Positions 26,760 through 50,600 of a stretch of 64,000 nt of DNA are shown in pieces. The position numbers were made by a program, and so were the translations under genes. The stretch is taken from sequence record ON529860.1. The stretch is one strand, 5' to 3'. The notes under the pieces were generated by a model that ran no database searches, was not told the origin of the DNA, and worked only from the letters and a program-made list of their open reading frames with translations. The stretch's first letter is position 1. Every line of letters begins with the position of its first letter.

Positions 26760-27860
26760 TTAGGCGACCGACCGGATGATTTCGAGAGTTTGCATGGTAG
26801 TCCGCACGGGGGCTGAGGGGAGTACGAGGAGGGTTTCAAGGGTCTGCATGGTGGTCCGCACGGGGGCTGCGCCACGGTGGTTGACCACTTCCACCGTCTG
26901 CATGGTGTTTCGCACGGGTTTGCGATCCGAAGGATAGGCATGGACGATCACATAGCCTGGGCCGCCGCGCGCGCCGTTGCCGTTGCTGCCGCCGGCGCCG
27001 CCTCCGCCTACCGCGCCGGGATAGTCCGTGTCGCTGGTCCCCGACGGCGAAGCGCCTGTGCCACCGCCGGCCGTGCCGTCCGCAAGCCGAAGCGATTCCC
27101 AGCGCGGGAAATAGGCCGATCCGCCGCCGCCTAGCACGATCTGGGTATTGGTGGTGAAGTTGGCCGCGCCGCCGCCATAGTAGCCCCCACCGCCGCCGCC
27201 GCCGCCCCTTGTGAACGTCTCCGACTGCACCGTGAAGCGATTGCCCGTTTTCCAGGCGCGGCCGCCGCGCAGGTAGCCGCCTTGAGATTCCGGGTTATTA
27301 GGGACCGAGGCGAGATCGCCCCGTCCACCCGTCGTCTGAGACCCACCGAGCGCGTTGTAGACCGTCAAATACTCAGAGCCGGCCACCAGTCCACCGCCGC
27401 GACCGGTCGCGCCCAGACCGCTGTATCCGCCGCCGCCGCCACCACCCGCCACGGCCCGCAACACACCATTGATGTAGACGCGCGACGAACCGCCGCCGCC
27501 GCCGCCGGCGTAAACGTTGGTGCCGGCGGCGCCGTCGCCCCCGTCCGGCCAGCCTCCGGCTCCGCCTTCACGCGGCGTCTGCAAACCGGGTCCGCCTGAA
27601 CCGCCGACCTGGATGAGGACCACGTCACCCGGAACGACTGGAAGGCTGATGGCGGTGAAGCCGCAGCCGCCGCCAGCGTTGAAGGACCCGCCGCCGCCGC
27701 CGCCGCCCCATAGCTTCAACCCCAACAGGTCGCATCCCGCCGGAACGACGCGGGTGAGGTTGATCCCCGTGTAGGGATAGGCGTTGAGCCCCAGGGTCAG
27801 AGGCTCGCCCGCAGAGGCACCGGACCGACGTGCGGCGGCGTAAAAACCGGGGATGATCAT
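26760..27860 (-). CDS. Glycine-rich tail-associated protein with C-terminal repeats
   Basis: GGGGGG tracts typical of phage glycine-rich domains, plus three PVRxTMQTxE repeats. Confidence 0.7.
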   Translation of the reverse strand: MIIPGFYAAARRSGASAGEPLTLGLNAYPYTGINLTRVVPAGCDLLGLKLWGGGGGGGSFNAGGGCGFTAISLPVVPGDVVLIQVGGSGGPGLQTPREGGAGGWPDGGDGAAGTNVYAGGGGGGSSRVYINGVLRAVAGGGGGGGYSGLGATGRGGGLVAGSEYLTVYNALGGSQTTGGRGDLASVPNNPESQGGYLRGGRAWKTGNRFTVQSETFTRGGGGGGGGYYGGGAANFTTNTQIVLGGGGSAYFPRWESLRLADGTAGGGTGASPSGTSDTDYPGAVGGGGAGGSNGNGARGGPGYVIVHAYPSDRKPVRNTMQTVEVVNHRGAAPVRTTMQTLETLLVLPSAPVRTTMQTLEIIRSVA

Positions 27861-35558: not shown

Positions 35559-35930
35559 TCAGGCGGTCAGCAGGAAGACGTCGACGCCGTCCGAGACCAC
35601 GAGACGGCGTGCGCCGGCCGGGAGAGCGACCGACGCGCCCGTCGGCGAGCATTGCAGGGTCAGCGCCCCCGTTCCCTCGTTGGAGGCGGCGAAAAAGCGG
35701 GGCGTCGCCGGAAGGGTGACGACGAGCGGGACGGCGTGACCGCTGAAGCGCAGATGGAAGGCGCGCGTGAACTCCGCCTTGGTGAGGGTCTTGGGAACCG
35801 TCGTCAGGGCGATGACGCGCTGCGCGTTGGCGGCCTGCTCCAACACCGCCACCGCCGTGTTGATCGTCGTCTCTTTTTGGTTCTGGTTGGGGCTGACCTG
35901 GATGATGTCCAGGATCGGGGAGTTCGCCAT
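35559..35930 (-). CDS. Small DUF2793-like paralog of the fibre N-terminus
   Basis: SPILDIIQVSPNQNQKETTINTA...LPATPRFFA closely parallels the first ~130 aa of the giant fibre. Confidence 0.8.
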   Translation of the reverse strand: MANSPILDIIQVSPNQNQKETTINTAVAVLEQAANAQRVIALTTVPKTLTKAEFTRAFHLRFSGHAVPLVVTLPATPRFFAASNEGTGALTLQCSPTGASVALPAGARRLVVSDGVDVFLLTA

Positions 35931-36011: not shown

Positions 36012-39000
36012 TTAAAAGTCCTGCCAGGGCTCGATCGAACGAACACCGGGGAATCCACGGCCAACCGCAGTAGACAGTTGATAGATCAGAACGTGGATCG
36101 AGTCAAGATTTACGTCAAAGGGCGCCGTAAATCCTGACACATCGACGGTCAGTTCGGGACTGTCCGTTTCGACCCGGTAGAGGACCTGGGCCTCGGCCGG
36201 GACTTCGTCGCTGCGCGACAGATCACCCGTGAACCCTGCCTTGAGGATGAAGACCTCATAGCGCTCACGCCCTTCATTGAGCGGCACCGATCCCGTCAGG
36301 TCTTGCATGTTTCCGCCCATGCGGGTCCGACGTTTCCACGTCAGGGTCACCGTCGTGCCAAGCACAGTCCGTCGAATGTCCTTGGGCGCATAGGGCATCA
36401 GGTCGCGCGGCTCGTAGCGCGTGATGGTGGAGGGCGACAACTCAGGCTTGACGCCGTCGCCGACGGCCCGGTGCCAGCGGGTCTTGGCCCGTTGGTCGAG
36501 CAGTTCCGCTCCCGATTCGAGCGTGCTGGGGGAGAGGACGACGAACATCTCGCCCAGGGCATGCGACGCGCAGGCGTATTCGGTGCCCCGGCGTCCGCGC
36601 AGGAGGTTCCAGATGGTCCACGAGCCGTCCGCGTTCTCGACGCAATCGCGGAACTGGATCAGTTCAGCCCCGAGCGCGCACATGTTGGCCCCGGACCACA
36701 GTTCGTCATCCGTGATCGATTCCAGTTCGAACCAGTCGATCGTCGGCCACAGGGTGATCCGCGTCTCCCAGTCAAGGCCGTGCGCGCCGTGACGCGGCGG
36801 CGGGACGACGCCGGACACCTGCGCCCACTCCGTGTCCTGATCCGTCAGGTAGACCAGGTCATAGTTGACGCCGTCTTCAGAACGCCACATGCCGGCGCCG
36901 TCGAACGGGGTTTGTCCGCCATGCGCCACACCGAGGTAGTGCAAGGAGTAGGCGCCGCCCGTGTCGTCCGCGTCGCGCATCAGCGGCGTGTTCAGCACGA
37001 TGGCCTTGGCGGCGCGCGGCGGGATGAAGGGTAGAGGATCGATGACGCCGGAGCCGCCGTCGGCCACGGCGTCGCTCTCATAGGCCATGGAGTCCTGGCT
37101 GAAGGTCTCCAGGGCGTAGGTCCAGTTGGCGCCGAACTCGGTCTGATGCAGGCGCTCACGGTAGCGGCGGCCGTCAGGGAAGCGAACGTCGACGATGTCC
37201 GCCGGATCGAGATCGATGTAGGCCCAGGGCAGGCTGGTCTCATGCTGGGTGCGCTCAGCCCATTGCGCCCAGAGCATGCGATTGACCTGATCCTTGGCCT
37301 CTTTGGCCGTCATGACGACGCCCATCTCCATCGAGACCTGCTGATAGGAGAACATCGCCGGGATCGGGTTGGAGATGCGGCGCGTCTGGGCGGTCGAGGT
37401 CTCGAAGTCCTGATCCCAGTTCATGTAGGACAGGTGGACGCGGCGCGGCAGATCGGCGTCCTGGAGACGGCTTTCCTTCCAGAAATCGACGCCCTCGCCG
37501 TCGCCGGTCGTCCCCAGAAGCTTGGACGTGATCCGACGCACGGGTTTCCCGGTCTGGGATTCGTTCGATCCGGCGCCGCGCATGACGCCGACCATGACGC
37601 CGTTCCGCTCGACCAGATCGAACAGATAGAGCATGCGCAACTGGGCCAGGACGGATCGCAGGTCCGACAGGGAAGCCCAGCCGTAGCCTCGCACGGGCTG
37701 CGATTGCAAGGCCGTCAGATCGTACTGCGCCGGGGTCAGTCCTGCGCGGTTCAACAGGGTCGCCACAAGCCCCGCCAGCGTGGTGGACTCCGGCTTCACG
37801 GTGAGGCCCTTGCGAATGACCTGGATGCCCTGAGAGCCATAGGTCACGATCTGCCCATTGCCCGGATCAGCGTACTGCGAGACGCTGGAAGGGAAGGTGA
37901 CGGTGTTCCCGGTCGGGCCATAGAGGGGCTGCCCCCGATAGAGCAGATTGGACGTCGACTCGTTCACGGCGGCCTGGGACATCCAGTCCGGGTCGAGCGC
38001 CGCGTAAGGATCGTGAATCTCGACGATGTAGTCGCCGGTCGCCGCGTTCATCTTGTAGAGGCGCGAGCCGGAGACCCACCAGAACTCGCCGGTGGTCAGC
38101 ACGGAGGATTGCACGCCGCCCACGCCGGCGTTGAGCGCCGTCTTGCGCCAGGCCCAGCGGGACTGTTCCGGGAGGTATTTGCCGATATAGTGCCGTTGGG
38201 CGTTGCGCCAAACCAGCAGAACGCCCTTATCGGCCGGGTCATAGTGGCAGCCGAGCGTCTGGAAGTTGCTGATCGCGCCTTCATTCTCGATGGCGACGAC
38301 CTCGGACTTCGCCCAGCCTCCGGCCTGGGACACGCGATACAGATGCAGGTTCGTCACCGCGCTTCCCGAGCGGTCTCCGCCTTCGAAGATGTAGAAGGTC
38401 GCGCTGGGTTCGCCCGACACGCCGACATAGAAGCTGTCGCCGTAGACGCCGCGACTTTGAGACCCGAGATCAGCCAGGCCTCCCAAACCAAACGCCGAGG
38501 TGCACAGGGCGCGCTGGTAGCCCAGCACGCTGGTATACATGCACCACTCACGGCCTTCCCGATCCACGCTGAAAGCGCCAGCCCGGTTGCCGACGGGGAA
38601 CTCGGAGGTGGAGTTGGAGGAGGTCCCGAAGCGCCCGATGGTTTCGAACGTCACCGGATCATAGAGGATGAAGGGCTCGGAATTGGAGAAGCCGCCGTCG
38701 CCCTGGGTGACCAGAGCGCCAGTGGTGGGCGATACCCCCAGCAGGGCGGCGAGGCCCGGCGTGGCGCCACGCCCCTCTTCCCGGCTGCTGGACGGACGCA
38801 AGGCCGCGATGCCGCCGTTCGTCAGGCCGACGGCGATCAGGTCCATGTCGCCGTTGTAGGCGACTTCGGTCGTCTGATAGCTGGTGATGCGCGAGAAGGT
38901 GACCGGCGTGGCGCGGCCGATGATCTCGCCCTCGCCGTCGCCCTGGGCGAACACCTCGACGCTGATCTGAGGGATCGAGTTGCCGAAGTCCTCCAGAGGC

Positions 39001-39479
39001 ATGTCCTGGAACAGGATATAGGCCAGGCCGCGATAGGCCGGCGTATTGCCCTCGCCCACGATCTTCTCGATGGTCGGGTCCGGCATCTGGTTCTCGCCGC
39101 CATCGTAGACCTTGAACTTGAAGGTCTTCTTGATGGCGAGTTTTCCGGTTCCCGTGGCGTCGTAGATCAGCTTGTGGTTGGCCCAGATTTTCCGGACGTT
39201 GGTGATCGGTCCTCGGCAGATCGCCATCGCGAACGTACCCGTGTAGAGGTAGTATTTGTAACGCTTGAGCGCGACGGTCTTCTTCTTCTTGATCTCCTTG
39301 ATCTTGTCCGTCCAAATCATGTTGCCGGCCACCCGCACGATCCCGTAAGCATTCGGGATCGCCGCGCCATAGGTGGAGGCGGAGATTTTCAGGTCCTTCA
39401 GGCGGGGGCCTTCGGCCGGGAACAGGAAACCGATCCCGATCTGGGCCACCGCCATGACGGCGAACGAAAACGGGTCCAT
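36012..39479 (-). CDS. Tail tip / host-specificity protein, copy B (GTA g15 / phage-tail_3-like)
   Basis: GPRLKDLKISASTYG, PAYRGLAYILF-x-DMPLEDFGN and C-terminal LLRGRRGTE / WKRRTR. Confidence 0.85.
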   Translation of the reverse strand: MDPFSFAVMAVAQIGIGFLFPAEGPRLKDLKISASTYGAAIPNAYGIVRVAGNMIWTDKIKEIKKKKTVALKRYKYYLYTGTFAMAICRGPITNVRKIWANHKLIYDATGTGKLAIKKTFKFKVYDGGENQMPDPTIEKIVGEGNTPAYRGLAYILFQDMPLEDFGNSIPQISVEVFAQGDGEGEIIGRATPVTFSRITSYQTTEVAYNGDMDLIAVGLTNGGIAALRPSSSREEGRGATPGLAALLGVSPTTGALVTQGDGGFSNSEPFILYDPVTFETIGRFGTSSNSTSEFPVGNRAGAFSVDREGREWCMYTSVLGYQRALCTSAFGLGGLADLGSQSRGVYGDSFYVGVSGEPSATFYIFEGGDRSGSAVTNLHLYRVSQAGGWAKSEVVAIENEGAISNFQTLGCHYDPADKGVLLVWRNAQRHYIGKYLPEQSRWAWRKTALNAGVGGVQSSVLTTGEFWWVSGSRLYKMNAATGDYIVEIHDPYAALDPDWMSQAAVNESTSNLLYRGQPLYGPTGNTVTFPSSVSQYADPGNGQIVTYGSQGIQVIRKGLTVKPESTTLAGLVATLLNRAGLTPAQYDLTALQSQPVRGYGWASLSDLRSVLAQLRMLYLFDLVERNGVMVGVMRGAGSNESQTGKPVRRITSKLLGTTGDGEGVDFWKESRLQDADLPRRVHLSYMNWDQDFETSTAQTRRISNPIPAMFSYQQVSMEMGVVMTAKEAKDQVNRMLWAQWAERTQHETSLPWAYIDLDPADIVDVRFPDGRRYRERLHQTEFGANWTYALETFSQDSMAYESDAVADGGSGVIDPLPFIPPRAAKAIVLNTPLMRDADDTGGAYSLHYLGVAHGGQTPFDGAGMWRSEDGVNYDLVYLTDQDTEWAQVSGVVPPPRHGAHGLDWETRITLWPTIDWFELESITDDELWSGANMCALGAELIQFRDCVENADGSWTIWNLLRGRRGTEYACASHALGEMFVVLSPSTLESGAELLDQRAKTRWHRAVGDGVKPELSPSTITRYEPRDLMPYAPKDIRRTVLGTTVTLTWKRRTRMGGNMQDLTGSVPLNEGRERYEVFILKAGFTGDLSRSDEVPAEAQVLYRVETDSPELTVDVSGFTAPFDVNLDSIHVLIYQLSTAVGRGFPGVRSIEPWQDF

Positions 39480-42400
39480 CAGAAGGCCTCGTCGGGTGCG
39501 ACGGAGCGCAGCGCCGGGAAGCCCCGGCCCACGGCGTCGGAAAGCTGGTAAATCACCAGATGCAGCGTGTCGGTGTTCGGGGCGAAGCCGTCTTCAGCCT
39601 GGGCGGCGGCGTCGTAGACGAACTGCGGCGTCGCGCTCTCGAAGCGCCGGCGGTACGCTTCCGGCCCGCGCCCGCGCGAGCGGTCGCCGTCAAAGGGCGC
39701 ATCCAGGATGAAGGCTTCATAGCGCTCGATGCGCTCCGCCAGCGGCACTTCTCCGGTGCCGTCCTGCATGTTGCCGCCGAAGCGGGTGCATCGGCTCCAG
39801 GACACGGTGAAGTCGCTCGACGTTTCGGCCTTGACCCGCCGCACATCCGCAGGGGCGTAGGGCATGAGGTCTCGCGGCTCATAGGCGAGGCTCAACACGC
39901 CCTGGGTCGCCAGAGAGCCGCCGGACGCGACCGCCTTGAAGAAGCGCGCCTGGCCGCGAGCGCTGGTCTGCTCCACAGCAAAGCCGACCGTATCGGACGA
40001 GAGGAAGACGAACCGCTCCCCCGCGCCATGACGGTCGCAGCCATATTCCGTGCCGCGCCGCGCGCGCAGGAGGTTCCAGATGCTCCAGGTGCCGTCTTCA
40101 TTCTCGACGCAGTCCCGGAACTGGATGATCTCGTCGCCGACCAGGGCCAGATTGGCGCCGGCCCACAGTTCATCATCGGTGACGGATTCGATCGCGAACC
40201 AGTCCACCGCCGGGCGGATCGTCAGTCGGCTGGTCCAGTCCAGAGCAAAGGCCCCGAACGGCGGAGGCGGCAACACATCGCCGATCACCGTCCCCCACTC
40301 CAGATCGGAGTCCGGCGACGGGATGATTTCGTAGTCCAGGTTGTTGACCGAGCGGAGCAGGGCTCCTCCCGTCCAGGCCTGCTCCATGCCGTTGCCGAGC
40401 CCGACATAGTAGATGCTGGCCGAACCGCCCTGATCGTCCATGTCGCGCATCAGAGGCGTGTTGAACACGAACGGCAGCGCCAGCCCCGGCGGCAGGATGC
40501 CGGACGAACCGCCCGACCCCGCGCCGCCGTCCGCCTCCAGTTCATCCCAGCCGTCATAGGCGCCGGAATCCTGGGCGTAGCATTCGGTGCCCATGATGAA
40601 GTCGGCGCCGATCTCGGTGCGGTCGATGCGGTCTTCATAAAGGCGGCCGTCGTCCATCTTGACGTTGATGGTGTCGCCCGGATCAAGCATCAGGTAGGCC
40701 CACGGCAGGTAGGTCTGATGGCGCACGCGCTCGGACCACTGCGCATAGAGCATCTTGTGGACCTGGGCCTTGGCCTCTTTCGCCGCCATGACGATGTTGA
40801 TCTCCATGCTCACCTGCTGTCGCGAGAACATGGTCGGAACAGGCGAGGCGATGCGCACGGAATGGGCGGTCGAGGTCTCGAAATCTCGGTCGACGTTCAT
40901 GTAGGAGACGGTGACACGCGACGGCAGGTCCGCTTCCTGCATGCGGGTCTCGCTCCAGAAGTCGGAGGCTTCAGGCGAGGACGACCCCAGGGCCGCCTGG
41001 GGAATGACCTCAATGGGGACGCCCATGCCGTTGGTGTCGTCGGCGCGCATGGACGCCACCAGAAGGCCTTCACGCTCCACCAGGTCGAACAGGAACAGCC
41101 GACGCAGTTCGTCGAGAACGCCCTTGATGTCGGTGGCCGAGGCCCAGCCGTAACCCCGGATCGGAATCGCATAGAGCGCCGACAGGTCGGTGCGCATCAG
41201 CGGCATGCCGCCTTCTTCGAGAAGGCGGGCGACGATGGTGCCGACGCTGACTCCGGTGGCGATGTTGGTGGCCTTGACGACGCCGTCGACGCCGTCCAGA
41301 GCGATCAGCAGGCCGCGCTGGGCGTCGATCGCCTGAAGCGCCGCCACGCCGCCCTCGTAAGGGGCTTTGAGCGGAATGCCCGACCCTTGGGTGCTCACGA
41401 TCATGTTGACCGTGCGTCCCGCCGCCTGCCCGCCCGACATGTAGTCGTGCTGGGCGTAGGATTCGGGACTGTCGGCGTAGGCCCACCCGAACTCGTAATA
41501 GTCCGCCAACACCTGCGGGTAACGCGCCAGGTAATCCGCCCAGTCGGGCGTGCCGGTGGCTTCTCCGGCGTCTTCACCGTCGATGGGCGTGCCCGTGGCG
41601 GTATCCAGCAGATAGACGCGCCCGCCGACGAGCCAGGCGATCTGGGATTCCAGCGTGCGGCTCTCAGGCGCGATTTCCGGCGGATACCCAGGGATGGCGC
41701 GGGTCCAGGCGACCGCGCCCGTATCCTCGTTCCACTTGGTCAGGTAGGCCTGGCCGGCGCGCTTCATGAAAATCAGCACGCCCGGCATGCCGGCGTCCCA
41801 CAGGATGGGTCCGATCTCGGTCCCGTCGACCTCGGCGAGGTCCTCAATCCCGTCGACGGTCACCCGCGACAGGCGCAAGGTCGCGCCGTTCGGGCGGACG
41901 ACATAGAAGATCGCCGACGCGGCGATGTCGGTGGGGTCGCGACCCACCACGCGAGCGCCCGCGCCGAGCGTGCCGGACCACAGCACGTCCAGGGTCGACG
42001 CGTCATGCAGGCAGGCGGAACCCGAGGCGTCCACCGCCAGCACCCGCATGGCCCCGTTGCTGGCCGATGCGGGCGCCGCGCGGACATACTGGAGCGACGG
42101 GGCGTGCGTGGCGACCCGTTGCAGCGAGAAGGGATCGAGCCGCCCCAGGGCGTTCGGCCCCGCCTCAGGTCCGAAAAGGGTGAACAGCGAACCGTCGACG
42201 CCGCCGCACAACAGGCGATTGAGCCGCTCTCCCTCGGGGTAGCCCAGGGTGTCCGCCGGGTAGAGGACGCGGGCCTTGCCGTCACGAAGGCTGACGGATT
42301 TGATGGCGTCGTCATAACGCAGGTAGAAGACTGCACGGGGGAAGTCGAAGACGGCTTCTCCGGGCGCGCGGTCGCGATCGAGGTCCGTCAGGCCATCCTG

Positions 42401-43036
42401 TTCGGTCAGCGGGGTCACCGTCACCGTCGTGGACTGTTCCCCAACCATCACCTCGGCGGTGATCTGGGGAATGCGGTTCCCGAAGTCCTCCAGAGGCATG
42501 TCGTCGAACAGGATGTAGGCCAGGCCCCGGAAGGCCGGCGCATTACCCTCGCCCAGATTGGTCTCGATGGCGGAATCCGGCAACTGGTCCTCATCGCCGC
42601 GATAGAAGCGCATGCGATATTTGGAGACGCCCTGACCCGTGATGCGCTGGGTGATCGCTTCCTTGACCGAGTTGGGTTGGGTCGCCTGGGTCGGGCTGAT
42701 CCCGCCCGTGGCGTCGTAGATCAGCTTGTTGTCCGCCCAGATGCGACGGATTTCCCGAACGGGACCCTGGCACAGGCCCATGGCGAAGGTGCAGTAGTAG
42801 GTATACTGGTTGTAGGCGCCGCCCTTGCCCGACTTCTTCTTCTTGTTTTCGCGGATCGGCATCGACCAGATCATGTTGCCGGGCACGCGCGTCAGGCCGA
42901 ACACCCAGGGGATGGCCGCGCCATAGGTCGAGGCGCTGATCTTGAGGTCTTTCAGGCGCGGGCCTTCCGACGGGAACAGATAGCTGATCCCGACCTGGGC
43001 CACCGCCATCATCGCCATGCTGAACGGATCAGCCAT
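39479..43036 (-). CDS. Tail tip / host-specificity protein, copy A (GTA g15 / phage-tail_3-like)
   Basis: Same N- and C-terminal motifs as copy B, with a divergent middle. Confidence 0.85.
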   Translation of the reverse strand: MADPFSMAMMAVAQVGISYLFPSEGPRLKDLKISASTYGAAIPWVFGLTRVPGNMIWSMPIRENKKKKSGKGGAYNQYTYYCTFAMGLCQGPVREIRRIWADNKLIYDATGGISPTQATQPNSVKEAITQRITGQGVSKYRMRFYRGDEDQLPDSAIETNLGEGNAPAFRGLAYILFDDMPLEDFGNRIPQITAEVMVGEQSTTVTVTPLTEQDGLTDLDRDRAPGEAVFDFPRAVFYLRYDDAIKSVSLRDGKARVLYPADTLGYPEGERLNRLLCGGVDGSLFTLFGPEAGPNALGRLDPFSLQRVATHAPSLQYVRAAPASASNGAMRVLAVDASGSACLHDASTLDVLWSGTLGAGARVVGRDPTDIAASAIFYVVRPNGATLRLSRVTVDGIEDLAEVDGTEIGPILWDAGMPGVLIFMKRAGQAYLTKWNEDTGAVAWTRAIPGYPPEIAPESRTLESQIAWLVGGRVYLLDTATGTPIDGEDAGEATGTPDWADYLARYPQVLADYYEFGWAYADSPESYAQHDYMSGGQAAGRTVNMIVSTQGSGIPLKAPYEGGVAALQAIDAQRGLLIALDGVDGVVKATNIATGVSVGTIVARLLEEGGMPLMRTDLSALYAIPIRGYGWASATDIKGVLDELRRLFLFDLVEREGLLVASMRADDTNGMGVPIEVIPQAALGSSSPEASDFWSETRMQEADLPSRVTVSYMNVDRDFETSTAHSVRIASPVPTMFSRQQVSMEINIVMAAKEAKAQVHKMLYAQWSERVRHQTYLPWAYLMLDPGDTINVKMDDGRLYEDRIDRTEIGADFIMGTECYAQDSGAYDGWDELEADGGAGSGGSSGILPPGLALPFVFNTPLMRDMDDQGGSASIYYVGLGNGMEQAWTGGALLRSVNNLDYEIIPSPDSDLEWGTVIGDVLPPPPFGAFALDWTSRLTIRPAVDWFAIESVTDDELWAGANLALVGDEIIQFRDCVENEDGTWSIWNLLRARRGTEYGCDRHGAGERFVFLSSDTVGFAVEQTSARGQARFFKAVASGGSLATQGVLSLAYEPRDLMPYAPADVRRVKAETSSDFTVSWSRCTRFGGNMQDGTGEVPLAERIERYEAFILDAPFDGDRSRGRGPEAYRRRFESATPQFVYDAAAQAEDGFAPNTDTLHLVIYQLSDAVGRGFPALRSVAPDEAF

Positions 43037-43040
43037 TTCG

Positions 43041-43457
43041 TTAGTCCTCCACGCCGGGGAAATCGAGCACGCAGCGCAGGCGGGTCGACCAGTAACCGTC
43101 CCACTCCTCTTCGATCACGCTGCGCTTGGAGAGCGAGGCGTGCAGGAGGTAGGGACGGTCGTATTTTTCAGTGATGATGCCGATGTGGCAGGGCTGGTGC
43201 TGATCCCGCAGGATCACCGCCGTTCCGGGGGCGATGACCTGGGGATCGCGATAGATCATGAAGCGTTTGACATGATCGACGAAGCGGCCGTCGGGATTGC
43301 GGGAATAGCCGTCGATGTCCTCGTAAGGCACGTCAAAGGCCGCACCCACGACGCAGACGAGCCCGATGCAGTCGACACCGGTCGAGGTGCGCCCGCGATG
43401 CCGCCAGGGCACGCCGAGCAAACGGCGGCCTTCGTTGATGATGTCTTGACGCAGCAT
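43041..43457 (-). CDS. NlpC/P60 family tail peptidase (GTA g14-like)
   Basis: LGVPWRHRGR, GVDCIGL and HIGI. Confidence 0.9.
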   Translation of the reverse strand: MLRQDIINEGRRLLGVPWRHRGRTSTGVDCIGLVCVVGAAFDVPYEDIDGYSRNPDGRFVDHVKRFMIYRDPQVIAPGTAVILRDQHQPCHIGIITEKYDRPYLLHASLSKRSVIEEEWDGYWSTRLRCVLDFPGVED

Positions 43458-43461
43458 GGAG

Positions 43462-45135
43462 TTACATCGCCGGGGCGTTGGGGGTCTGGTAGTATTTGTC
43501 CTGCCCAGGCACGTCCGGTTCGCCCCGGAAGTTCAGGATATTGGCGAACTTGTCCTTGCAGGAGGCGCGGGTCTTGTCGCAGCCCGGATGGATGACGAAA
43601 CGATCGCCGGCGCGGGGGATGTGATAGGGGCGTTGGAACAGCGTCACCGAGGCGGCGGCGGACACCTTGATTTCCTGGGCGCGGCCGGCGTTCGGCCCCG
43701 TCTCCCAGATCATGAGGCCGCCGTCGTAATAGCCGACCGCATCGCCCAGCGCCGAGGTCACAACCGTGCGGCCGCCGTCCGAGGTGCCGATGACGGTCAT
43801 CGACTTCTTGTAGGACTTGACGGCCTTCCAGGTGACGGCGCCGTCCTGGATGGTGTCGCCCAGCAGGTTCGACCAGGCCGGTTCTTCGGCGCCGGAGGTG
43901 CCGGCAGTGATGCACTGGAAGGCGACGTCGCCATACTGGGAGGAAGAGCCCAGGGTGCCGTCCGGGAAGTTGACAGCGAGCGTGACCGTATCAAAGGCGG
44001 CGCCTTCCGAATAACGGCTGCGCTTGTGGGCGAACAGGTCGACACGCAGGCGACGGGTGCCCGCCGGGATCAGGATGTCGCGCACGATCTCCTGGAACCA
44101 GCGATCTTCCGCCGTCTTCTTCAGGCCCGTGTCATAGATCGCCGAGGCGCCGATCTGCACCCCCGCGCCGTCAAGGGCGAAGACGCGGAACCGGGCGCCG
44201 GCCTCTTTCGGGTTGATGCAGGCGTACCAGACCGTGGCGAACAGGCGGCACAGGCCCGTATCGAGTTGCACGGCGTCCCCGCCCTGGGCGATCAGGTCCA
44301 CGTCCTGATACATGCCGATGTCCGCGACCGTGTGTCCGTCGCCGTCGTTGTTGGTCACGTCGGAGAGCGTCCAGCCGTCGTCCGTGCCGAAGGCGGCGTA
44401 GGAGTCCTTGCCGCCCAGGCCGAAGAACGGCGTCTGCCGCACCGTCCAGCGCCCGCGAGGGTCGCCGTAGCTGGTCCAGCCTTCGATGTCGCGCACCGTC
44501 ACCGGCAGGGTTGCGGCGTCGTTGTCGAACGAGGGGTTTTGCAGCGACAGGTTCAGGTAGCCGGTCGCCACATTGATGATGCCCCGCACGACGTCTCCCC
44601 GCCGGTAGTAGCCGCCCGGTCGCCAGTCCGCCGGGCTGATCGCCACGCGGCAGCGCCGGTCGCCGAGGTCGGCGCGGCACTCCGGCGCATAGCCCTCGCC
44701 GATGCGATAGGTATAGACCTGGGTCAGCCCGCGCAGTTCGGCGATGAAGGTCGAATCTTCGTTCATCGTCACTTCGCCGAGCCAGCCGGTGCGCAGCGTC
44801 GTGGAGCCGGAGTCGGGCTCCATCCAGTTGACGATGAAGACGCGGACTTCAGCGAAGTCGAACAGGCCGCTCGCCACGTCGGCGCGCGCAATGTGCTTGG
44901 AGTTCAAGATGCCGCGCACTTCCATCTGGTCGACTTCAAGATCGAGGCCGGTGGTGATGGAGGTGCGGGCGAACGAGGAATAGGGCACGTATTCCGACGA
45001 GCCGATCCGCAGGACCTGGTCATGATCGGTGAACCGGAACGACCGACCATCCTTGCGGATGATCTCCAGGCAGGTGCACAGCGTGGTGACGCCTTGGCGG
45101 ATGTGGCTCTTCAGGGCGGGAGTGAGGTCTTTCAT
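43462..45135 (-). CDS. Baseplate hub protein (DUF2163/BR0599, GTA g13-like) with an inserted domain
   Basis: FRFTDHD, CRADLGD-x2-C and GCDKT-x2-SC-x2-KF-x-N-x2-NFRG. Confidence 0.9.
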   Translation of the reverse strand: MKDLTPALKSHIRQGVTTLCTCLEIIRKDGRSFRFTDHDQVLRIGSSEYVPYSSFARTSITTGLDLEVDQMEVRGILNSKHIARADVASGLFDFAEVRVFIVNWMEPDSGSTTLRTGWLGEVTMNEDSTFIAELRGLTQVYTYRIGEGYAPECRADLGDRRCRVAISPADWRPGGYYRRGDVVRGIINVATGYLNLSLQNPSFDNDAATLPVTVRDIEGWTSYGDPRGRWTVRQTPFFGLGGKDSYAAFGTDDGWTLSDVTNNDGDGHTVADIGMYQDVDLIAQGGDAVQLDTGLCRLFATVWYACINPKEAGARFRVFALDGAGVQIGASAIYDTGLKKTAEDRWFQEIVRDILIPAGTRRLRVDLFAHKRSRYSEGAAFDTVTLAVNFPDGTLGSSSQYGDVAFQCITAGTSGAEEPAWSNLLGDTIQDGAVTWKAVKSYKKSMTVIGTSDGGRTVVTSALGDAVGYYDGGLMIWETGPNAGRAQEIKVSAAASVTLFQRPYHIPRAGDRFVIHPGCDKTRASCKDKFANILNFRGEPDVPGQDKYYQTPNAPAM

Positions 45136-45138
45136 GGA

Positions 45139-45789
45139 TCAGCCCTGGAACAGGTCGTTCCAGTCGCGGACTTCGACCAGAGGGATCGAGGCCCAGGACT
45201 GGGTCAGCCAGAACTCGTGCGTGGCGTCGAGGTGATCGGTGTCGAAGCGGACGGGAACATGGAACTCGGCCGCACCGATCATGATCGGCGCGGTGTTGAG
45301 CGGCGGGACGGCGAAGATGATCTTGCCGGTGTCGTGGTCGATCGTGTAGTCGACGCCCTGGACCTGCACCGCCGCGCCCATCTTGACGCCGGCCACCGTG
45401 TCCCAGGCGATTTTGTAAAGCTTGCGCTGATAGACGTAGTTCTGCGCGGTCGCCGGGTTCTGATCGTTGTAGGTCTTGATGATCTGGAACTCGGTCTGAA
45501 CGCCGTCGCCGAGCGCGATCACTTGCTGCTTCAGGCGGAAATCGTTGTAGTCCTTGAAGCGGAACCCGAAGGCGCGGCCGCGCCGGGCGTAGAAGAACGC
45601 CGTCAGTTCATCCATCTGGACCTGGCTCTTGATCCCGTGGCTGACGTCATACTCGGCGCGCGTCATCGACCAGTCGATGTTGCGCTGCTCGTAGCCGGAA
45701 TCGGCCGTGAAGATCGTGGTCTTGAATTTCGGGCCGCCCGACGAGCCGTAGGAAATCTCCGTCGGGAAAAGCACCTCGTGAAAGGCCAT
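45139..45789 (-). CDS. Distal tail protein (DUF2460, GTA g12-like)
   Basis: FHEVLFP-x2-ISYGSSGGPKF, FRFKD-x2-D and FHVPVRFDTD. Confidence 0.9.
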   Translation of the reverse strand: MAFHEVLFPTEISYGSSGGPKFKTTIFTADSGYEQRNIDWSMTRAEYDVSHGIKSQVQMDELTAFFYARRGRAFGFRFKDYNDFRLKQQVIALGDGVQTEFQIIKTYNDQNPATAQNYVYQRKLYKIAWDTVAGVKMGAAVQVQGVDYTIDHDTGKIIFAVPPLNTAPIMIGAAEFHVPVRFDTDHLDATHEFWLTQSWASIPLVEVRDWNDLFQG

Positions 45790-45791
45790 GG

Positions 45792-47579
45792 TTAGTCCAA
45801 CTCCAGTTCGGACCAATCCCGCACTTCAACGAGGGGGATGGAGTCCCAGGACCGATAGGTCCAAAAATCATGCTTCATGTTGAGGTGATCGGTGTCGAAG
45901 CGGACCCCGATGTGGAACTCAGCGCTGTCCATCGTCAGCACTTCCGGCGGGGTGAACGCCACGCCGTCGAAGTCCGTGGAATAGACGGAGGACGGGTCGA
46001 TGACGGCGATGCCGCCAAAGGCGCCGACGTATTTCCGGTCAGGGTCGTAAACCTGGTATTCGCCGCCGGATTCAGGGGTCCGCCGGGAGACCAGGACGCC
46101 GGACTCGGTATTGATGCTCCACATCCGGTCGCCGAACGGCGTGCCGGTGCCGCGCACCCAGCACAGTTCGCCGTTCAGCACCGTCTGGCCGTTGGTCAGG
46201 GCGTGGAAGGGCGTCAGGGACGGCGGCATACGCCGCGTCCAAGCCCATTTCCCTTCCTCAGGCAGAAACAGGCCGCACCAGTAGTCGTAGCTGTAGGACG
46301 AATTGTTGATCCCCTCCTCGCCATTCCAGAAGATCAGGAGCCCTTCGGTCTTCTTGTCGTAGAAGACGGCGTCGGGGCGGGCCGTGCTCGCCCCCCATTC
46401 GATCGCCGTCCACATCGTGCCGCCGAACCAGATCGACAGGGCGCATCCGTGACCCGGAGAGGAGTCGGGGAGGAAGTGCACGAAGGCGAAACCGTTCAGC
46501 TTGTAAGGGCACGCGCCACGATACCGCTGCGAGATCAGGCTGCCGCCGAACCGCCCCAGATCGGCGACCATGGTCAAGGTCTCCGTCGAGTAGATGCGCA
46601 CATAGCCGAAGCTGTCGCCGTTGAGCAGGAACTGCTCATTGGAGGACACGCATCCCGGTACGATCGGTTCCTGGATGACGGGGTTCCAAATGGTCGCCGG
46701 AGGACCCTTGGCGACGTATTGCATCGTCCGCCCGTCCACCTTCACCAGGGTGTTCGCCATTGTCAGGTAGACCATGCCGGCCGGGCTGACGCCGACGATG
46801 TGGTCGAAGGCCTCGCCGCCAGGCACCTGCATCGTCAGGTGGGTGGCCTGGGCGTCTTCCTTGGCCGTCGGCAGGTGGAACCGACGCAGAACGAAATAGC
46901 CCAGACCCGTGCCCGCCCAGCCTCGGACAAAAGCATGCCCGGACTCCGAGGCGTAGAACAGGACCGGTCGGGTCACCGAGCCGCTGGCGTAGCTGTTGCC
47001 GAGCAGGGCGCCGGGATCGAACGGAGGCAGGAAGGTCACGCGCTGATAAGGCGTCGTCGCCGCGTAACGACCGCCCCACATCGGCGTGTTCAGGGTCAGC
47101 TTGCCGGTGTTGTAGTCCAGCTTGTAGTGGCGGGACGCCGAGATCGACTTCGTCAAGGTCGATCCATCGATCTGAACGCCCTTTTCGGAGTTCCACTCTA
47201 CCTTCTCGATCCGGCGCGTCGTCAGGAACTCCTGACCGGTCGCCGACGTGTTCCGATATTCCTTGTGAAGCTGGTAGACGTGCGTGGCGTAGTCGCCCTG
47301 ACCGAGGGTGACGTTCTCCAGCCTATAGTCGTTGAAGTCCTTGAACCGAAACCCGTAGGCCCGGCCGCACCGGTTCATGAAGAAGGTCGTCAGGGCTTCG
47401 GCCTGGGCCTGCGACTTGACGCCGTGACTGACGTCGTATTCCGCACGGGTTTCGGGCCAGTGGTCGACCCGCGCCTCGAAGCCGGAGTCCGCTTCCCAGA
47501 CCGAGGTCTTGAACTTCGGTCCGCCCGACGATCCATAGGAAATGTCCGGCGGGAAGAGGATGTCGTGGAAATCGGACAT
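45792..47579 (-). CDS. Second DUF2460 distal tail protein with a ~390-aa insertion
   Basis: The same DUF2460 N- and C-terminal motifs flank a large insert. Confidence 0.85.
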   Translation of the reverse strand: MSDFHDILFPPDISYGSSGGPKFKTSVWEADSGFEARVDHWPETRAEYDVSHGVKSQAQAEALTTFFMNRCGRAYGFRFKDFNDYRLENVTLGQGDYATHVYQLHKEYRNTSATGQEFLTTRRIEKVEWNSEKGVQIDGSTLTKSISASRHYKLDYNTGKLTLNTPMWGGRYAATTPYQRVTFLPPFDPGALLGNSYASGSVTRPVLFYASESGHAFVRGWAGTGLGYFVLRRFHLPTAKEDAQATHLTMQVPGGEAFDHIVGVSPAGMVYLTMANTLVKVDGRTMQYVAKGPPATIWNPVIQEPIVPGCVSSNEQFLLNGDSFGYVRIYSTETLTMVADLGRFGGSLISQRYRGACPYKLNGFAFVHFLPDSSPGHGCALSIWFGGTMWTAIEWGASTARPDAVFYDKKTEGLLIFWNGEEGINNSSYSYDYWCGLFLPEEGKWAWTRRMPPSLTPFHALTNGQTVLNGELCWVRGTGTPFGDRMWSINTESGVLVSRRTPESGGEYQVYDPDRKYVGAFGGIAVIDPSSVYSTDFDGVAFTPPEVLTMDSAEFHIGVRFDTDHLNMKHDFWTYRSWDSIPLVEVRDWSELELD

Positions 47580-47681: not shown

Positions 47682-50600
47682 TTAGCTGAGGTTCCGGGTC
47701 GAGGCCCGCTTGAGGTCCCGGTTCTGCTGACGCTGGATCGAGCCCTGCGACTTGCGGAAGGCGTCCGGGTTGGGCGCGATGACCGTGATGTTCGACGTCA
47801 CGTTGGCGCCGCCCGAGGGAACATTGCCCATGTCGACCGGAACCGCCCGACCGTTCGGCAGGGGGATGATGGCTTCGTTCGGGTGAACGATCGCCGGCAT
47901 GCCGCCGTTGGAGGTGTTGGCGGTGCCCACGTCGTAGTGCGGCGCCTTGCCCCAGTCCATGCCGGCGTTCGAGACATAGCCGCCGTCGGCGAACTGTTTC
48001 ATGACGCCGGACGCCATTTCCATGTAGGTCCCCACCTTACCCCAGGTGCCGCCGGTCAAAATGTTGGCCCCGAAGTTGATCACATCCGCGATCGGGTTGG
48101 AATGAGCGGCGATGGCGGTGGCGTCCACGGTCACGCCACGATGCTCGCCGATGACGCCCTTGACGGCCTCGGGGTCCTTCTCAGGAGCCTTTTCCTTCTT
48201 GAACAGGTCCGCCAGGGTGCTGATCAGGGCCGCGCCTTGCATGAAGCCTGCGCCCCGCTCTTCCATGGTCCGCCCCTTGCCGAACATCTCACCGACGAAC
48301 GACAGCGGACTATCCGGCTTGCCGTTCTTGCCGCGTCCGAAGACGTTCGACATGGTCGGCTTGGTGAACTTCTCGCCGAAGTTGGTCTTGGCCGAGGAGA
48401 GCATGTCGGAGAACCAACCGCCGCCCGCGAAGCCGGGGAGGCCGTCGACCAGGCCGCCGTTGGCGTAGGCCTTGCCGTTGTTGATCGCTTCAAGGAGGGC
48501 GCGATTCTGCGACGTCGCCGCCGCGTTGATGACGAACTCGCCGTTGGACAGCCGGGCGTTGATGTCGTCCGAGCGCGGGCCGCCGCGCCCCGAGACATAG
48601 CCGCCGTCCGCGTAGAGACCGGTCAGGTCCGGGGCGAACGACTTGCCCTCGAAGGTGAACCCTTCGGTGGCGTCGCCCAGACTCGGCTTGGCGCTAGGCT
48701 TAGCGTCGCCCTTGCCGCCGCCTTTCGCCATTACAGCCGCTGCTTTTTCCAGCTTTTTGACGGCTTCCCCAAAGGCTTCGACCTGGGTCTTGAAACCTTC
48801 GGCCGCCGTGTTGAAGGTCGTGGGGACCTGCATCAACATCTGCGCCGCCGTATACAGCGCCGTCGCGGCTTGATCGTAACCGGCGCCGGCGTCGTCTCCG
48901 GACAGCATGACAGGGCCAGCGGAAGGAGCCGTCCCCATGGAGGACGTCGTGGACATCCGCTTCGTGGTTTCGCTCGTGGGGCTGGTCTCGCCGCCGATGA
49001 GATTGAAGGCCTTGCGCCAGAGCGGAGTCGTATCGCGCTCTGCCCCGAGACCGTGCGGCGTGGCGGGGGCGTGCCCCTGAACGGCGCGGGCCGGAGTCAT
49101 GCGGCCGAGCGACGACATGATCGGGCGCAAGCTGACCGGCGCCATCGGGTCCATGACCTCGCCGCCCAGCGCCGGCGACTTCAGGCCGAGCGACGTCATC
49201 GTGCGGTCCATCAGGCCCTGCACGTAATCCAGGGGTCCTGCGGGCGCCGCCGCAACAGCGGGGGCGGGCTTGTTGAGCAGGCCCGTCGAGATGGCGCCCG
49301 AACGCACGCCGCCGGCGTGATTCAGGGTGCTCTCAGCGGTGGTGTTCAACACGCGAGAGATGGCGCCGTCGGGATCGAAATAGGCGGCGATCGTCTTCAG
49401 CGCATTCGCTGCGTCGGTCAGGGCCTTGACCTCGGCGTTGATCGCATCCTGCTGATTCTTCTGAGCGTCGACCAACGCTTGCTGGGCCGCCAGGTCCGAC
49501 TGCGCGTCTGCCTTGGTCTTGTCGATCATCGCCACGGCGGCGTTATACTGAGCCGTCGCCGCCTCCAGCCCGGCTTGCGCCTCCGAGCCAGGCTTCTTGA
49601 CGCCCATGACGCCGAGCATGCCGCTGAGCGCGTCATCCACCGTCGCCTTCACGATCTGACGACGGATGTTCTTGAACATCGCCTGCCAATCGACGTCTTC
49701 GCCCATCAGTTCATCGGTGATGCCGTCCGAGAGGCCTTCCATGAAGGCGCCCTTGATGTTTTCCATGCGTCGGGCGAACGGCTCCAGGCCGTCGACCCAG
49801 GCTGCGAATCCGGGCGGGTTCTCGATGGTGTGGCGGGCTTCAGCCAGGGTCTTCGCCAGCTTCGCCATGACAGGCTCCGCCGCTTCAAGCTGCGCCAGGG
49901 TCGCGTTCGGCATGTTCGTCAGATCGCGCAGGATGTCGCGATACGAGGCGCGGTATCCGCGCATCGTCTTGTCCGTCGCCGAGTCGATGCCGTCGCTCAG
50001 TTCGACGATGATCGAACGCAGGGACTCAGCCTGATCCGACATGGCCTGCACGTCGGCCGTGCGGGACAGCGCCGTCAACAGAGCCGGGTTGGCCTCGACC
50101 TGGGCGCGCTTCTGATCGAAAGTGCCGCCTTGGACCGACTGGTTGATCAGGTCGTTCAGGTAGGTGTCGCGATTGGACACGACGCCGCTGGCCTTGCCGA
50201 CGCGCATCTGCGCTTCGTTCAAAGTGTCCATCAGGCGAACCTGGGCTTCCAGGGCCTTGGTGCGGTCGCGCTCCATTTCCCACTGCTGGCGCGCCGTGTT
50301 CAGGCTTTCGACCTGAATGTCCTTGCCGGTCAGTCTCAGGCCGTTGACGTGTTCCGTCCACTTGGCCTCGTCCTGCATCAACTCGATCGGGTAGCCCTGC
50401 TCCTTCATCTCATTGATGCGCTCCTGCCACTCGGCCTCCTTGCCCATGCCTTGCAGGGTCTTGAGCGTCAGGTCGTTGGTTTCGCGCGCCAGGCGGTTCG
50501 CCTTGGAGACGGGGTTCATCGCGTCTTGCAGTTCCTTCGCCTGACGGGCGATGGCGGCCGAGATTTGGTCGCGAATCGGCGAGGTCACGAGCGCGGCGTT

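What the first reader, a model, noticed from the sequence alone, without database searches (positions are those of the whole stretch)
36012..47579. Duplicated tail-tip and Dit genes carrying one shared beta-propeller-like insert
Seen: two tandem tip proteins with near-identical ends and two tandem DUF2460 Dit genes. The variable middles of both tip copies and the insert of the second Dit are homologous to each other. Compare FYDKKTEGLLIFW...EGKWAWTR...GELCWVRG...INTESG (about 46100-46365), HYDPADKGVLLVW...QSRWAWRK...GEFWWVSG...MNAATG (about 38035-38250) and LWDAGMPGVLIFM...TGAVAWTR...SQIAWLVG...LDTATG (about 41590-41805). Each ends in a D-x2-(R/N)-G...G-x3-(I/V) blade. Inference: one receptor-binding domain has spread into two unrelated structural scaffolds. 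This implies either a heteromeric tip or alternative baseplates giving mixed host range.
Basis: partly seen in the sequence, partly recalled or inferred. Interest (0 to 1): 0.65.

Follow-up and report, generated by a model that had tools for sequence, protein, structure and literature searches.

The report
Shared beta-propeller on phage tail-tip proteins
A giant Brevundimonas phage carries the same seven-bladed propeller domain on three tail-tip proteins: two tandem copies of the central tip protein and an extra copy of the ring protein that caps the tail tube. This looks like a Gram-negative counterpart of the "decorated baseplates" known from dairy phages, and the decorated ring protein always comes paired with, or fused to, a plain one.

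Summary
The window is Brevundimonas phage vB_BpoS-Papperlapapp, a 357-kb siphovirus. Its minus strand encodes a GTA/lambda-type tail tip: TMP, DitL (DUF2460 plus insert), DitS (plain DUF2460), hub, NlpC/P60, megatron A, megatron B.

Profile comparison gives 99.95% probability, and HMMs built from one scaffold find the other.

AlphaFold2 models of DitL and megatron B show seven-bladed beta-propellers (Z 21-23.5 to WD40-type propellers).

Among 1.84 billion representative proteins, every full-length hit of the domain is either a megatron middle or a DUF2460 insert.

In megatrons the propeller fills the outward-facing "peripheral domain" slot, which is mannanase-like in roseophage R4C.

The copies are old paralogs (about 24% identity). 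Dit-borne propellers form one clade.

DitL always lies beside a plain DitS. In Bajun and a metagenomic relative the two are fused in one protein. This argues for co-assembly, not alternative baseplates.

The megatron duplication is shared with Caulobacter jumbo phages and was noted in 2012.

A host-adhesion role is inferred, not shown. I class this as a new variant of the "evolved Dit/Tal" theme.

The parts
47682..55007 (-). Tape measure protein, 2441 aa, with an SLT lytic transglycosylase domain; first gene of the tip module
   Evidence: Pfam TMP_3 2e-22 and SLT 1.3e-6; annotated as TMP in ON529860.1
45792..47579 (-). DitL: DUF2460 distal tail protein paralog (595 aa) carrying the propeller; an 'evolved Dit'
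   Evidence: Pfam DUF2460 3.1e-41 in two stretches. Core is 46-49% identical to DitS. phmmer matches the RcGTA Dit 6tba_6B at 1.2e-19.
45966..47072 (-). DitL propeller domain (residues ~170-538), seven-bladed beta-propeller
   Evidence: AF2 model: pLDDT mostly 80-94 here. VIA Z 23.5 to Sec12 and ~22 to WDR5/Rrp9 over model residues 170-538. Foldseek best E 1.7e-9. No Pfam or PHROG hit.
45139..45789 (-). DitS: plain DUF2460 distal tail protein (216 aa). Its ATG lies 2 nt after the DitL stop, with GGAG upstream.
   Evidence: Pfam DUF2460 4.6e-58, full length; junction sequence; GenBank CDS
43462..45135 (-). Baseplate hub protein (557 aa), lambda gpL / RcGTA g13 type, with an extra ~300-aa middle region
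   Evidence: Pfam Phage_phiJL001_Gp84_N 6.8e-53 and Phage_BR0599 2e-24. The middle is unrelated to the propeller.
43041..43457 (-). NlpC/P60 tail peptidase (138 aa), RcGTA g14 / lambda gpK position
   Evidence: Pfam NLPC_P60 6.8e-5; annotated as endopeptidase
39479..43036 (-). Megatron A (1185 aa), gpJ / RcGTA g15-type central tip protein
   Evidence: Pfam Phage-tail_3 and Rcc01698_C. Its orthologs form a clade with megatron A of CcrColossus, CcrPW, CcrBL9 and CcrSC.
41246..42454 (-). Megatron A propeller domain (residues ~195-597 by HMM envelope)
   Evidence: Domain HMM 5e-114; hhalign to the DitL insert 97.2% and to the megB middle 98.1%. This copy was not modelled itself.
36012..39479 (-). 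Megatron B (1155 aa), faster-evolving tandem paralog. Its ATG overlaps the megatron A stop (TGATG).
   Evidence: Pfam; BLASTP A vs B 39% identity, full length; junction; tree
37800..38933 (-). Megatron B propeller domain (residues 183-560), seven-bladed beta-propeller in the 'peripheral domain' slot
   Evidence: AF2 model. VIA Z 22.5 to Rrp9 and 22.1 to YncE over model residues 183-560. Flanks align to RcGTA megatron 54-207 and 764-1251.
35559..35930 (-). Small tail protein (123 aa), equivalent to the N-terminal ~120 residues of the long phiCbK-type tail protein
   Evidence: phrog_11660 1.3e-32, profile positions 5-124 of 1412
27860..35524 (-). Giant tail protein (2554 aa) with four F5/8 type C (discoidin) domains; the likely fibre or adhesin downstream of the megatrons
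   Evidence: Pfam F5_F8_type_C 4.1e-35, 4 stretches

Best explanation
This is the tail-tip (baseplate) module of a phiCbK-like jumbo siphophage, built on the RcGTA/lambda plan: TMP, Dit, hub, peptidase, megatron.

A family-specific seven-bladed beta-propeller of about 370 residues occupies an accessory position in three of its proteins. In both tandem megatron paralogs it fills the slot between the adhesin-like and central domains. RcGTA and roseophage R4C have their 'peripheral domain' there, which the R4C authors predict to be mannanase-like. In DitL, an extra paralog of the DUF2460 distal tail protein, the propeller is spliced in at the point matching residue ~165 of the RcGTA Dit. By strand order this is the end of the Dit insertion domain, which points outward in the solved relatives.

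Shown here: the homology, the fold, the slot, the restriction to these two scaffolds, and the age of the copies.

Inferred history: the propeller is ancestral in the family's megatron and moved once into a duplicated Dit. All Dit propellers form one clade, and every full-length megatron in the hit list has one.

Inferred assembly: DitL and plain DitS are both subunits of the same tail in a fixed 1:1 ratio. Either they alternate in one ring or they form two stacked rings. The reasons are that DitL is never found without DitS beside it, the genes are translationally coupled, and some lineages fuse them into one chain.

Inferred function: the tip then displays a crown of propellers (3 or 6 from DitL, plus 3 from each megatron trimer present). 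These act as multivalent, fast-evolving host-surface adhesion modules that hold and orient the tip before the megatron N-terminal helices and the peptidase act.
For: Identity and synteny:
- 100% match to ON529860.1.
- Pfam assignments.
- Solved relatives 6tba/6teh and 8gtc.

Homology of the three domains: BLASTP, hhalign, and cross-scaffold HMMs with no decoy hits.

Fold:
- AF2 models.
- VIA Z 21-23.5 with 285-300 aligned residues to seven-bladed propellers, over DitL 170-538 and megB 183-560.
- The best viral structural match of DitL is the CcrColossus megatron.

Slot: megB 23-182 aligns to RcGTA megatron 54-207, and megB 566-1081 to 764-1251. RcGTA domain boundaries and the mannanase-like prediction for the R4C peripheral domain come from PMC7296036 and PMC10276861. 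The outward-protruding Dit insertion domain is described.

Restriction: 40 representative clusters in 1.84 billion proteins. All full-length hits are megatron or DUF2460. Copy number per genome is 3, 2 and 1 in Papperlapapp, Bajun and phiCbK.

Age and single origin: 24-25% identity between copies. Dit propellers form one clade at SH-aLRT 98. The Bajun C-unit core groups with the DitL cores. Asn37 of the E-Q-R-N motif is invariant in 16 DitS and absent from 13 DitL.

Co-assembly:
- DitL is adjacent to DitS in all informative contexts.
- Fused DitS-DitL chains: Bajun P0027 and P0024.
- Coupled junctions.
- In RcGTA, odd and even Dit subunits already play different roles, contacting hub and megatron respectively.

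Exposure or adaptation: the propeller diverges faster than its scaffold in all three proteins. For Papperlapapp vs Gurke it is 52 vs 77-81%, 65 vs 79-89% and 52 vs 74-88%.
Against: - No binding, expression or virion-composition data exist for this phage.
- Faster divergence could simply reflect weaker constraint.
- The conserved residues of the domain are structural (Gly, Trp, turn Asp). No ligand site can be pointed to.
- All compared Brevundimonas phages were isolated on the same host strains, so divergence is not tied to a known host-range difference.
- The exact placement of the propeller relative to the Dit insertion domain is read from the strand order of the model and the RcGTA alignment. 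It was not checked on 3D coordinates.
- Megatron A's propeller was not modelled.
- Rooting of the domain tree is unknown, so the direction megatron-to-Dit rests on parsimony only.
- The complex prediction could not be run.
Confidence: 0.62

Rival explanations
1. Alternative baseplates. Each virion uses either DitL or DitS, and either megatron A or B. The population then carries mixed tips and a broader or bet-hedged host range.
For: - Both megatron paralogs keep every scaffold domain: the N-terminal iris helix, the adhesin-like domain, Phage-tail_3 and Rcc01698_C. Each could therefore form a complete trimer alone.
- The RcGTA and R4C baseplates hold only one megatron trimer.
Against: - For the Dit pair, the fused DitS-DitL chains in Bajun and P0024 force both units into the same particle.
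- DitL never replaces DitS.
- Stop/start-coupled genes argue for co-production.
- The A/B pair has been retained in at least three phage genera. That fits either model.
Confidence: 0.15
2. The propeller is a structural platform, not an adhesin. It serves as a docking or spacing module for fibres or neighbouring baseplate proteins, and real receptor recognition lies in the downstream discoidin-domain giant protein.
For: - WD40-type propellers are classic protein-protein scaffolds.
- In RcGTA the peripheral domain contacts the fibre-binding domain.
- The 2554-aa protein with four F5/8 type C domains is an obvious adhesin candidate.
- Conserved residues look purely structural.
Against: - The domain evolves faster than every scaffold region. 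That is unusual for an internal docking platform.
- The homologous slots in RcGTA and R4C are described as outward-facing and carbohydrate-related.
Confidence: 0.18
3. The propeller is an enzyme: a glycan lyase or hydrolase that clears capsule or other surface polysaccharide. It would functionally replace the mannanase-like domain of GTA-type megatrons.
For: - Foldseek hits include the propeller enzymes oligogalacturonate lyase 3pe7, glycoside hydrolases BT3686 (5muk) and 5mum, and a putative neuraminidase 4irt. These have somewhat better rmsd than the WD40 hits.
- The slot holds a mannanase-like fold in R4C.
Against: - No conserved acidic or histidine constellation exists across the 51 aligned domains.
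- There are no Pfam hits to any enzyme family.
- The WD40, Sec12 and YncE matches score as high or higher.
Confidence: 0.07

Closest known systems
RcGTA baseplate (g12 Dit, g13 hub, g14 peptidase, g15 megatron; PDB 6TBA/6TEH) and roseophage R4C (PDB 8GTC)
   Same: - Same gene order and the same protein families.
- Dit with an outward insertion domain.
- Megatron with an N-terminal iris helix, an adhesin-like domain, and central and fibre-binding domains that align in sequence.
   Different: - The peripheral slot holds a seven-bladed propeller instead of the mannanase-like domain predicted for R4C.
- There are two megatron genes and two Dit genes instead of one each.
- The hub is about 260 aa longer.
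'Evolved Dit' and CBM-decorated Tal proteins of siphophages infecting lactic acid bacteria (Lactobacillus J-1, lactococcal 936 phages, S. thermophilus cos/pac phages; PMC7533335, PMC6669499)
   Same: An accessory module is spliced into the Dit, and modules of the same fold decorate the Tal of the same phage. This gives multivalent host-surface binding in addition to the main receptor-binding protein.
   Different: - The host is a Gram-negative alphaproteobacterium.
- The scaffolds are DUF2460 and megatron, not the galectin-type Dit and gp27-like Tal.
- The module is a ~370-aa beta-propeller, not a BppA-like CBM.
- The evolved Dit coexists with, or is fused to, a classical Dit rather than replacing it.
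- Binding is untested here.
phiCbK gp99 and its duplication in CcrColossus (gp122, gp123), Gill et al. 2012, PMC3556154
   Same: It is the same megatron family. The tandem duplication was already recorded, and gp99 is a proven virion protein of phiCbK. Papperlapapp megatron A is orthologous to the first Colossus copy.
   Different: That paper reported an Ig-like domain and PF13550. It did not recognise the propeller, and no second Dit exists in those phages.
Seven-bladed WD40-type propellers (Sec12 4H5I, Rrp9 4J0X, WDR5, E. coli YncE 3VGZ)
   Same: Same fold: Z 21-23.5, rmsd 3.3-3.8 A, 285-300 aligned residues.
   Different: Sequence identity is 5-12%. There is no Pfam WD40, PQQ or other propeller family hit. 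The match shows fold only and says nothing about function.

Membership tests
DUF2460 / RcGTA g12-type distal tail protein | Pfam PF09343 match above the gathering score | tested here: met
   DitS 196.5 bits and DitL 141.5 bits against a cut-off of 30.4
DUF2460 / RcGTA g12-type distal tail protein | Sequence similarity to a solved Dit that forms the ring between tube and baseplate | tested here: met
   DitL residues 4-167 match 6tba_6B residues 3-165 at E 1.2e-19. It also matches 8gtc_G. Ring formation by DitL itself could not be tested.
Megatron (RcGTA g15 / lambda gpJ-like central tip protein) | Phage-tail_3 plus Rcc01698_C domains, and an N-terminal adhesin-like region | tested here: met
   Both paralogs hit both Pfam families. 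phmmer to 6tba_8A gives 3.7e-40 in two stretches.
Megatron (RcGTA g15 / lambda gpJ-like central tip protein) | Mannanase-like peripheral domain between the adhesin-like and central domains, as predicted for R4C | tested here: not met
   The slot (megB 183-560) is a beta-propeller. No glycosidase or TIM-barrel Pfam family hits either megatron or its excised middle. The protein is a member with a swapped accessory domain.
Seven-bladed beta-propeller fold | Structural superposition over all blades on solved propellers | tested here: met
   Z 21-23.5 with 285-300 residues aligned for two independent models. The models are predictions with pLDDT about 80-90 in the domain.
WD40 / PQQ / other named propeller sequence families | Pfam family match | tested here: not met
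   The only hit is Beta-prop_EML_2 at E 0.094 (12.5 bits against a cut-off of 90), and there are no PHROG hits for the isolated domains
Evolved Dit (evoDit) | Classical Dit core interrupted by an accessory domain | tested here: met
   DUF2460 is split by a 370-aa insert at residues ~167/539
Evolved Dit (evoDit) | The inserted module binds host cell-surface carbohydrate | not testable with these tools
   This needs binding assays with purified domain. Only position and evolutionary rate support it.

The most novel reading that the evidence does not exclude
The Dit layer of these phages is an obligate hetero-assembly of two paralogs. It could be an alternating DitS3-DitL3 ring, or, in Bajun-type phages, a trimer of fused tandem Dits forming a pseudo-hexamer. 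Such an assembly would hard-wire in the genes the six-fold to three-fold symmetry adaptation that RcGTA achieves by conformational alternation of one protein. It would place exactly three Dit propellers in register with the three-fold baseplate. The two megatron paralogs would likewise sit in one tip.
Probability: 0.35. Interest if true: 0.65.

Novelty: new variant of a known kind. Interest (0 to 1): 0.5.

Why it matters
It extends the idea of a baseplate decorated with repeated adhesion modules from dairy phages of Gram-positive bacteria to the GTA/lambda-type tip of alphaproteobacterial jumbo phages.

It defines an unannotated, family-restricted propeller domain that current Pfam and PHROG models miss.

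The pairing of a plain and a decorated Dit, with natural fusions of the two, is a ready-made case for studying how a tail adapts six-fold to three-fold symmetry. It also gives a concrete target for finding the still-unknown tail receptor-binding parts of phiCbK-like phages.

Tried and rejected
- Word-index protein search with the DitL insert found only two close relatives.
- An IMG/VR pattern scan found none. The exhaustive HMMER search was therefore used.
- Pfam at E<=10 and PHROGs gave nothing for the isolated domains.
- I tested whether the 611-aa tail tube protein is an internal tandem duplication, as in T5 pb6. That would have argued for a three-fold tail. hhalign of its two halves gave no signal (probability about 2%), so the argument was dropped.
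No verdict was obtained.
- The search for sequencing runs found only metagenome or virome runs holding small shares of the stretch.
- No whole-genome handle exists for the window. The GenBank record was scanned through a locus handle instead.
- The hub's own ~300-aa middle region was checked as a fourth possible copy and is unrelated.
- No conserved catalytic-looking residues were found in the propeller.


Full report
**What the region is**

The 11.6-kb stretch is identical to Brevundimonas phage vB_BpoS-Papperlapapp (ON529860.1). This is a 356,874-bp siphovirus of the Dolichocephalovirinae isolated on B. pondensis LVF1 (PMC10070969).

All genes run on the minus strand, in this order:
- Tape measure protein: 47682-55007, 2441 aa, TMP_3 + SLT.
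- DitL: 45792-47579, 595 aa.
- DitS: 45139-45789, 216 aa.
- Hub: 43462-45135, 557 aa, Gp84_N + BR0599.
- NlpC/P60 peptidase: 43041-43457.
- Megatron A: 39479-43036, 1185 aa.
- Megatron B: 36012-39479, 1155 aa.
- A 123-aa tail protein.
- A 2554-aa protein with four discoidin domains.

This is the g12-g15 plan of the Rhodobacter gene transfer agent, equivalent to lambda M-L-K-J. Both Dits match the solved RcGTA and R4C Dits, and both tip proteins match the solved megatrons.

**Checking the observation**

The two tip proteins align end to end at 39% identity. By region this is 63% at the N end, 50% at the C end and 24.5% in the middle. They are homologous, not near-identical.

DitL is DitS-like (46-49% identity) on both sides of a ~370-residue insert.

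The three middles are significantly alike even as single sequences: BLASTP E 3e-7, 3e-5 and 0.11. The hub middle serves as a negative control.

Ortholog profiles from related phage records give hhalign probabilities of 97-99.9% over 233-354 columns.

After the exhaustive search I built one HMM from megatron middles only and one from Dit inserts only. Each finds all members of the other scaffold (73-114 and 21-100 bits). None of 3000 shuffled decoys reaches E 10. The two profiles align at 99.95%, E 1.8e-38, over 311 columns.

The homology is therefore certain and covers the whole domain.

**Fold**

AlphaFold2 with family alignments gave confident all-beta models for the inserts. In the DitL model the insert's 10-residue blocks are mostly at pLDDT 80-94. 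The megB model has mean pLDDT 78.

Both domains superpose on seven-bladed propellers, DitL over residues 170-538 and megB over residues 183-560:
- DitL to Sec12: Z 23.5, rmsd 3.3 A, 297 residues.
- megB to Rrp9: Z 22.5.
- megB to YncE: Z 22.1.
- Both to WDR5: Z ~21-22.

The best viral structural match of DitL is the CcrColossus megatron. No Pfam or PHROG family recognises the isolated domains. Megatron A's copy was not modelled; its assignment rests on sequence homology.

**Where the domain sits**

By phmmer, megB 23-182 aligns to RcGTA megatron 54-207 (the adhesin-like domain). MegB 566-1081 aligns to RcGTA 764-1251 (central and fibre-binding domains).

The propeller therefore occupies the slot of the RcGTA 'peripheral domain' (residues 230-744; PMC7296036). 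The R4C authors predict their peripheral domain to be mannanase-like and count it among carbohydrate-binding accessories (PMC10276861).

In DitL the propeller is spliced in at the point matching residue ~165 of the RcGTA Dit. This follows the strands that, by order, belong to the insertion domain. In R4C that domain 'protrudes outward from the tube surface'. I read this placement from the strand order of the model, not from coordinates.

**Distribution**

A profile of the domain searched against 1.84 billion representative proteins found only 40 clusters. Every full-length hit is either a megatron with the domain in the same slot or a DUF2460 with the domain inserted. A few fragments lack flanks.

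Six-frame scans of whole phage records give three copies in Papperlapapp, two in Bajun and one in phiCbK.

**History**

Megatron duplication:
- It is shared with CcrColossus, CcrPW, CcrBL9 and CcrSC. phiCbK and Bajun have one copy.
- On a scaffold-only tree the A copies of Brevundimonas and Caulobacter phages form a clade (SH-aLRT 96). The B copies sit on long branches.
- The duplication therefore predates these genera. Gill et al. 2012 already noted it for Colossus (PMC3556154).

Propeller transfer:
- On the propeller tree all Dit-borne copies form one clade (98), separate from all megatron copies.
- DitL cores, including the C-terminal unit of the Bajun protein, group together.
- Asn37 of the E-Q-R-N motif is invariant in 16 plain Dits. 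It is Val or Thr in all 13 DitL cores.

Together these point to one old transfer between scaffolds. Every full-length megatron in the hit list has the domain, and only some lineages have DitL. Megatron-to-Dit is thus the parsimonious direction, but the tree cannot be rooted.

**Do the paralogs work together?**

There are two arrangements. Both have a plain DitS next to DitL:
- Class I: TMP-DitL-DitS-hub-peptidase-megA-megB. This is found in the seven B. pondensis phages and in metagenomic contigs L010, L011/12, L020 and L022/23.
- Class II: TMP-DitS-DitL-hub-peptidase with a single megatron (L015, L021).

In Bajun (910 aa) and P0024 (794 aa) the two are one polypeptide. A complete DitS unit is joined by a short linker to a DitL unit. 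P0047 is a further tandem-Dit fusion with a different, weakly matching middle.

Fusion of separate genes is strong evidence that the products sit in one complex at 1:1. It is hard to reconcile with either/or baseplates.

In Papperlapapp the DitS ATG follows the DitL stop by two bases. The megB ATG overlaps the megA stop.

In RcGTA the odd and even subunits of the Dit hexamer already differ in conformation, contacting hub and megatron respectively. An alternating S3L3 ring is therefore attractive. Two stacked rings are equally allowed by what I have. For the two megatrons I have no evidence that separates one shared tip from alternative tips.

**Function**

In all three proteins the propeller diverges faster than its scaffold. 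Between Papperlapapp and Gurke it is 52-65% identical, against 74-89% for the scaffolds. That pattern, the accessory positions, and the precedent below make multivalent host-surface adhesion the most likely role. The precedent is the evolved Dit and Tal proteins that carry CBMs of one fold in S. thermophilus and lactococcal phages (PMC7533335).

This is inference. The conserved residues are structural, with no ligand or catalytic site visible. A structural docking role or an enzymatic role remain rivals. No proteomic or transcript data exist for these phages.

**Verdict**

It is a new variant of a known kind: an unannotated propeller module shared by Dit and megatron in a GTA-type tip, with a paired or fused plain-plus-decorated Dit. 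That pairing appears not to have been described. The megatron duplication itself is already in the literature.

Noticed in passing
window 43726-44655 (hub residues ~161-470): The hub protein is 557 aa against 296 aa in RcGTA. It carries a ~300-aa middle region with no Pfam family. The only traces are a faint CBM_5_12 hit (E 0.88) and a PHROG 'head decoration' hit at residues 406-443. It is unrelated to the propeller and may be a third kind of accessory module on the same baseplate.
   Followed up: partly
window 35559-35930 and 27860-35524: A 123-aa ORF matches only the first ~120 positions of a 1412-position tail-protein PHROG (phrog_11660). A separate 2554-aa protein with four F5/8 type C domains follows it. 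The anchor part of the long tail protein may be split off as its own gene here.
   Followed up: no
L019:10001-12556 (P0047, 851 aa): This is another tandem-Dit fusion with a different layout. Two complete, uninterrupted DUF2460 units are separated by ~415 residues that match the propeller profile only weakly (E 7.7e-4, three short stretches).
   Followed up: no
window 47682-55007; L015, L017, L019, L020, L021: The lytic domain inside the tape measure protein differs between relatives. It is SLT in Papperlapapp, CHAP in L017 and L019, and a weak Phage_lysozyme hit in L015, L020 and L021.
   Followed up: no
DitS residue 37 / DitL residue 38 (window ~45679-45681 and ~47466-47468): Asn of the conserved S-G-Y-E-Q-R-N motif is invariant in 16 plain Dits and is Val or Thr in all 13 decorated Dits. 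This is the only fully discriminating core position. AlphaFold leaves this N-terminal region unmodelled, as expected for a loop that orders only in the assembly.
   Followed up: partly
L003, L015, L021 compared with the window: Gene order of the Dit pair is inverted between the two phage groups: DitL-DitS here, DitS-DitL in Bajun-type phages. The Bajun-type plain Dits also lack the usual C-terminal D-W-N-D-L tail that the decorated partner keeps.
   Followed up: no
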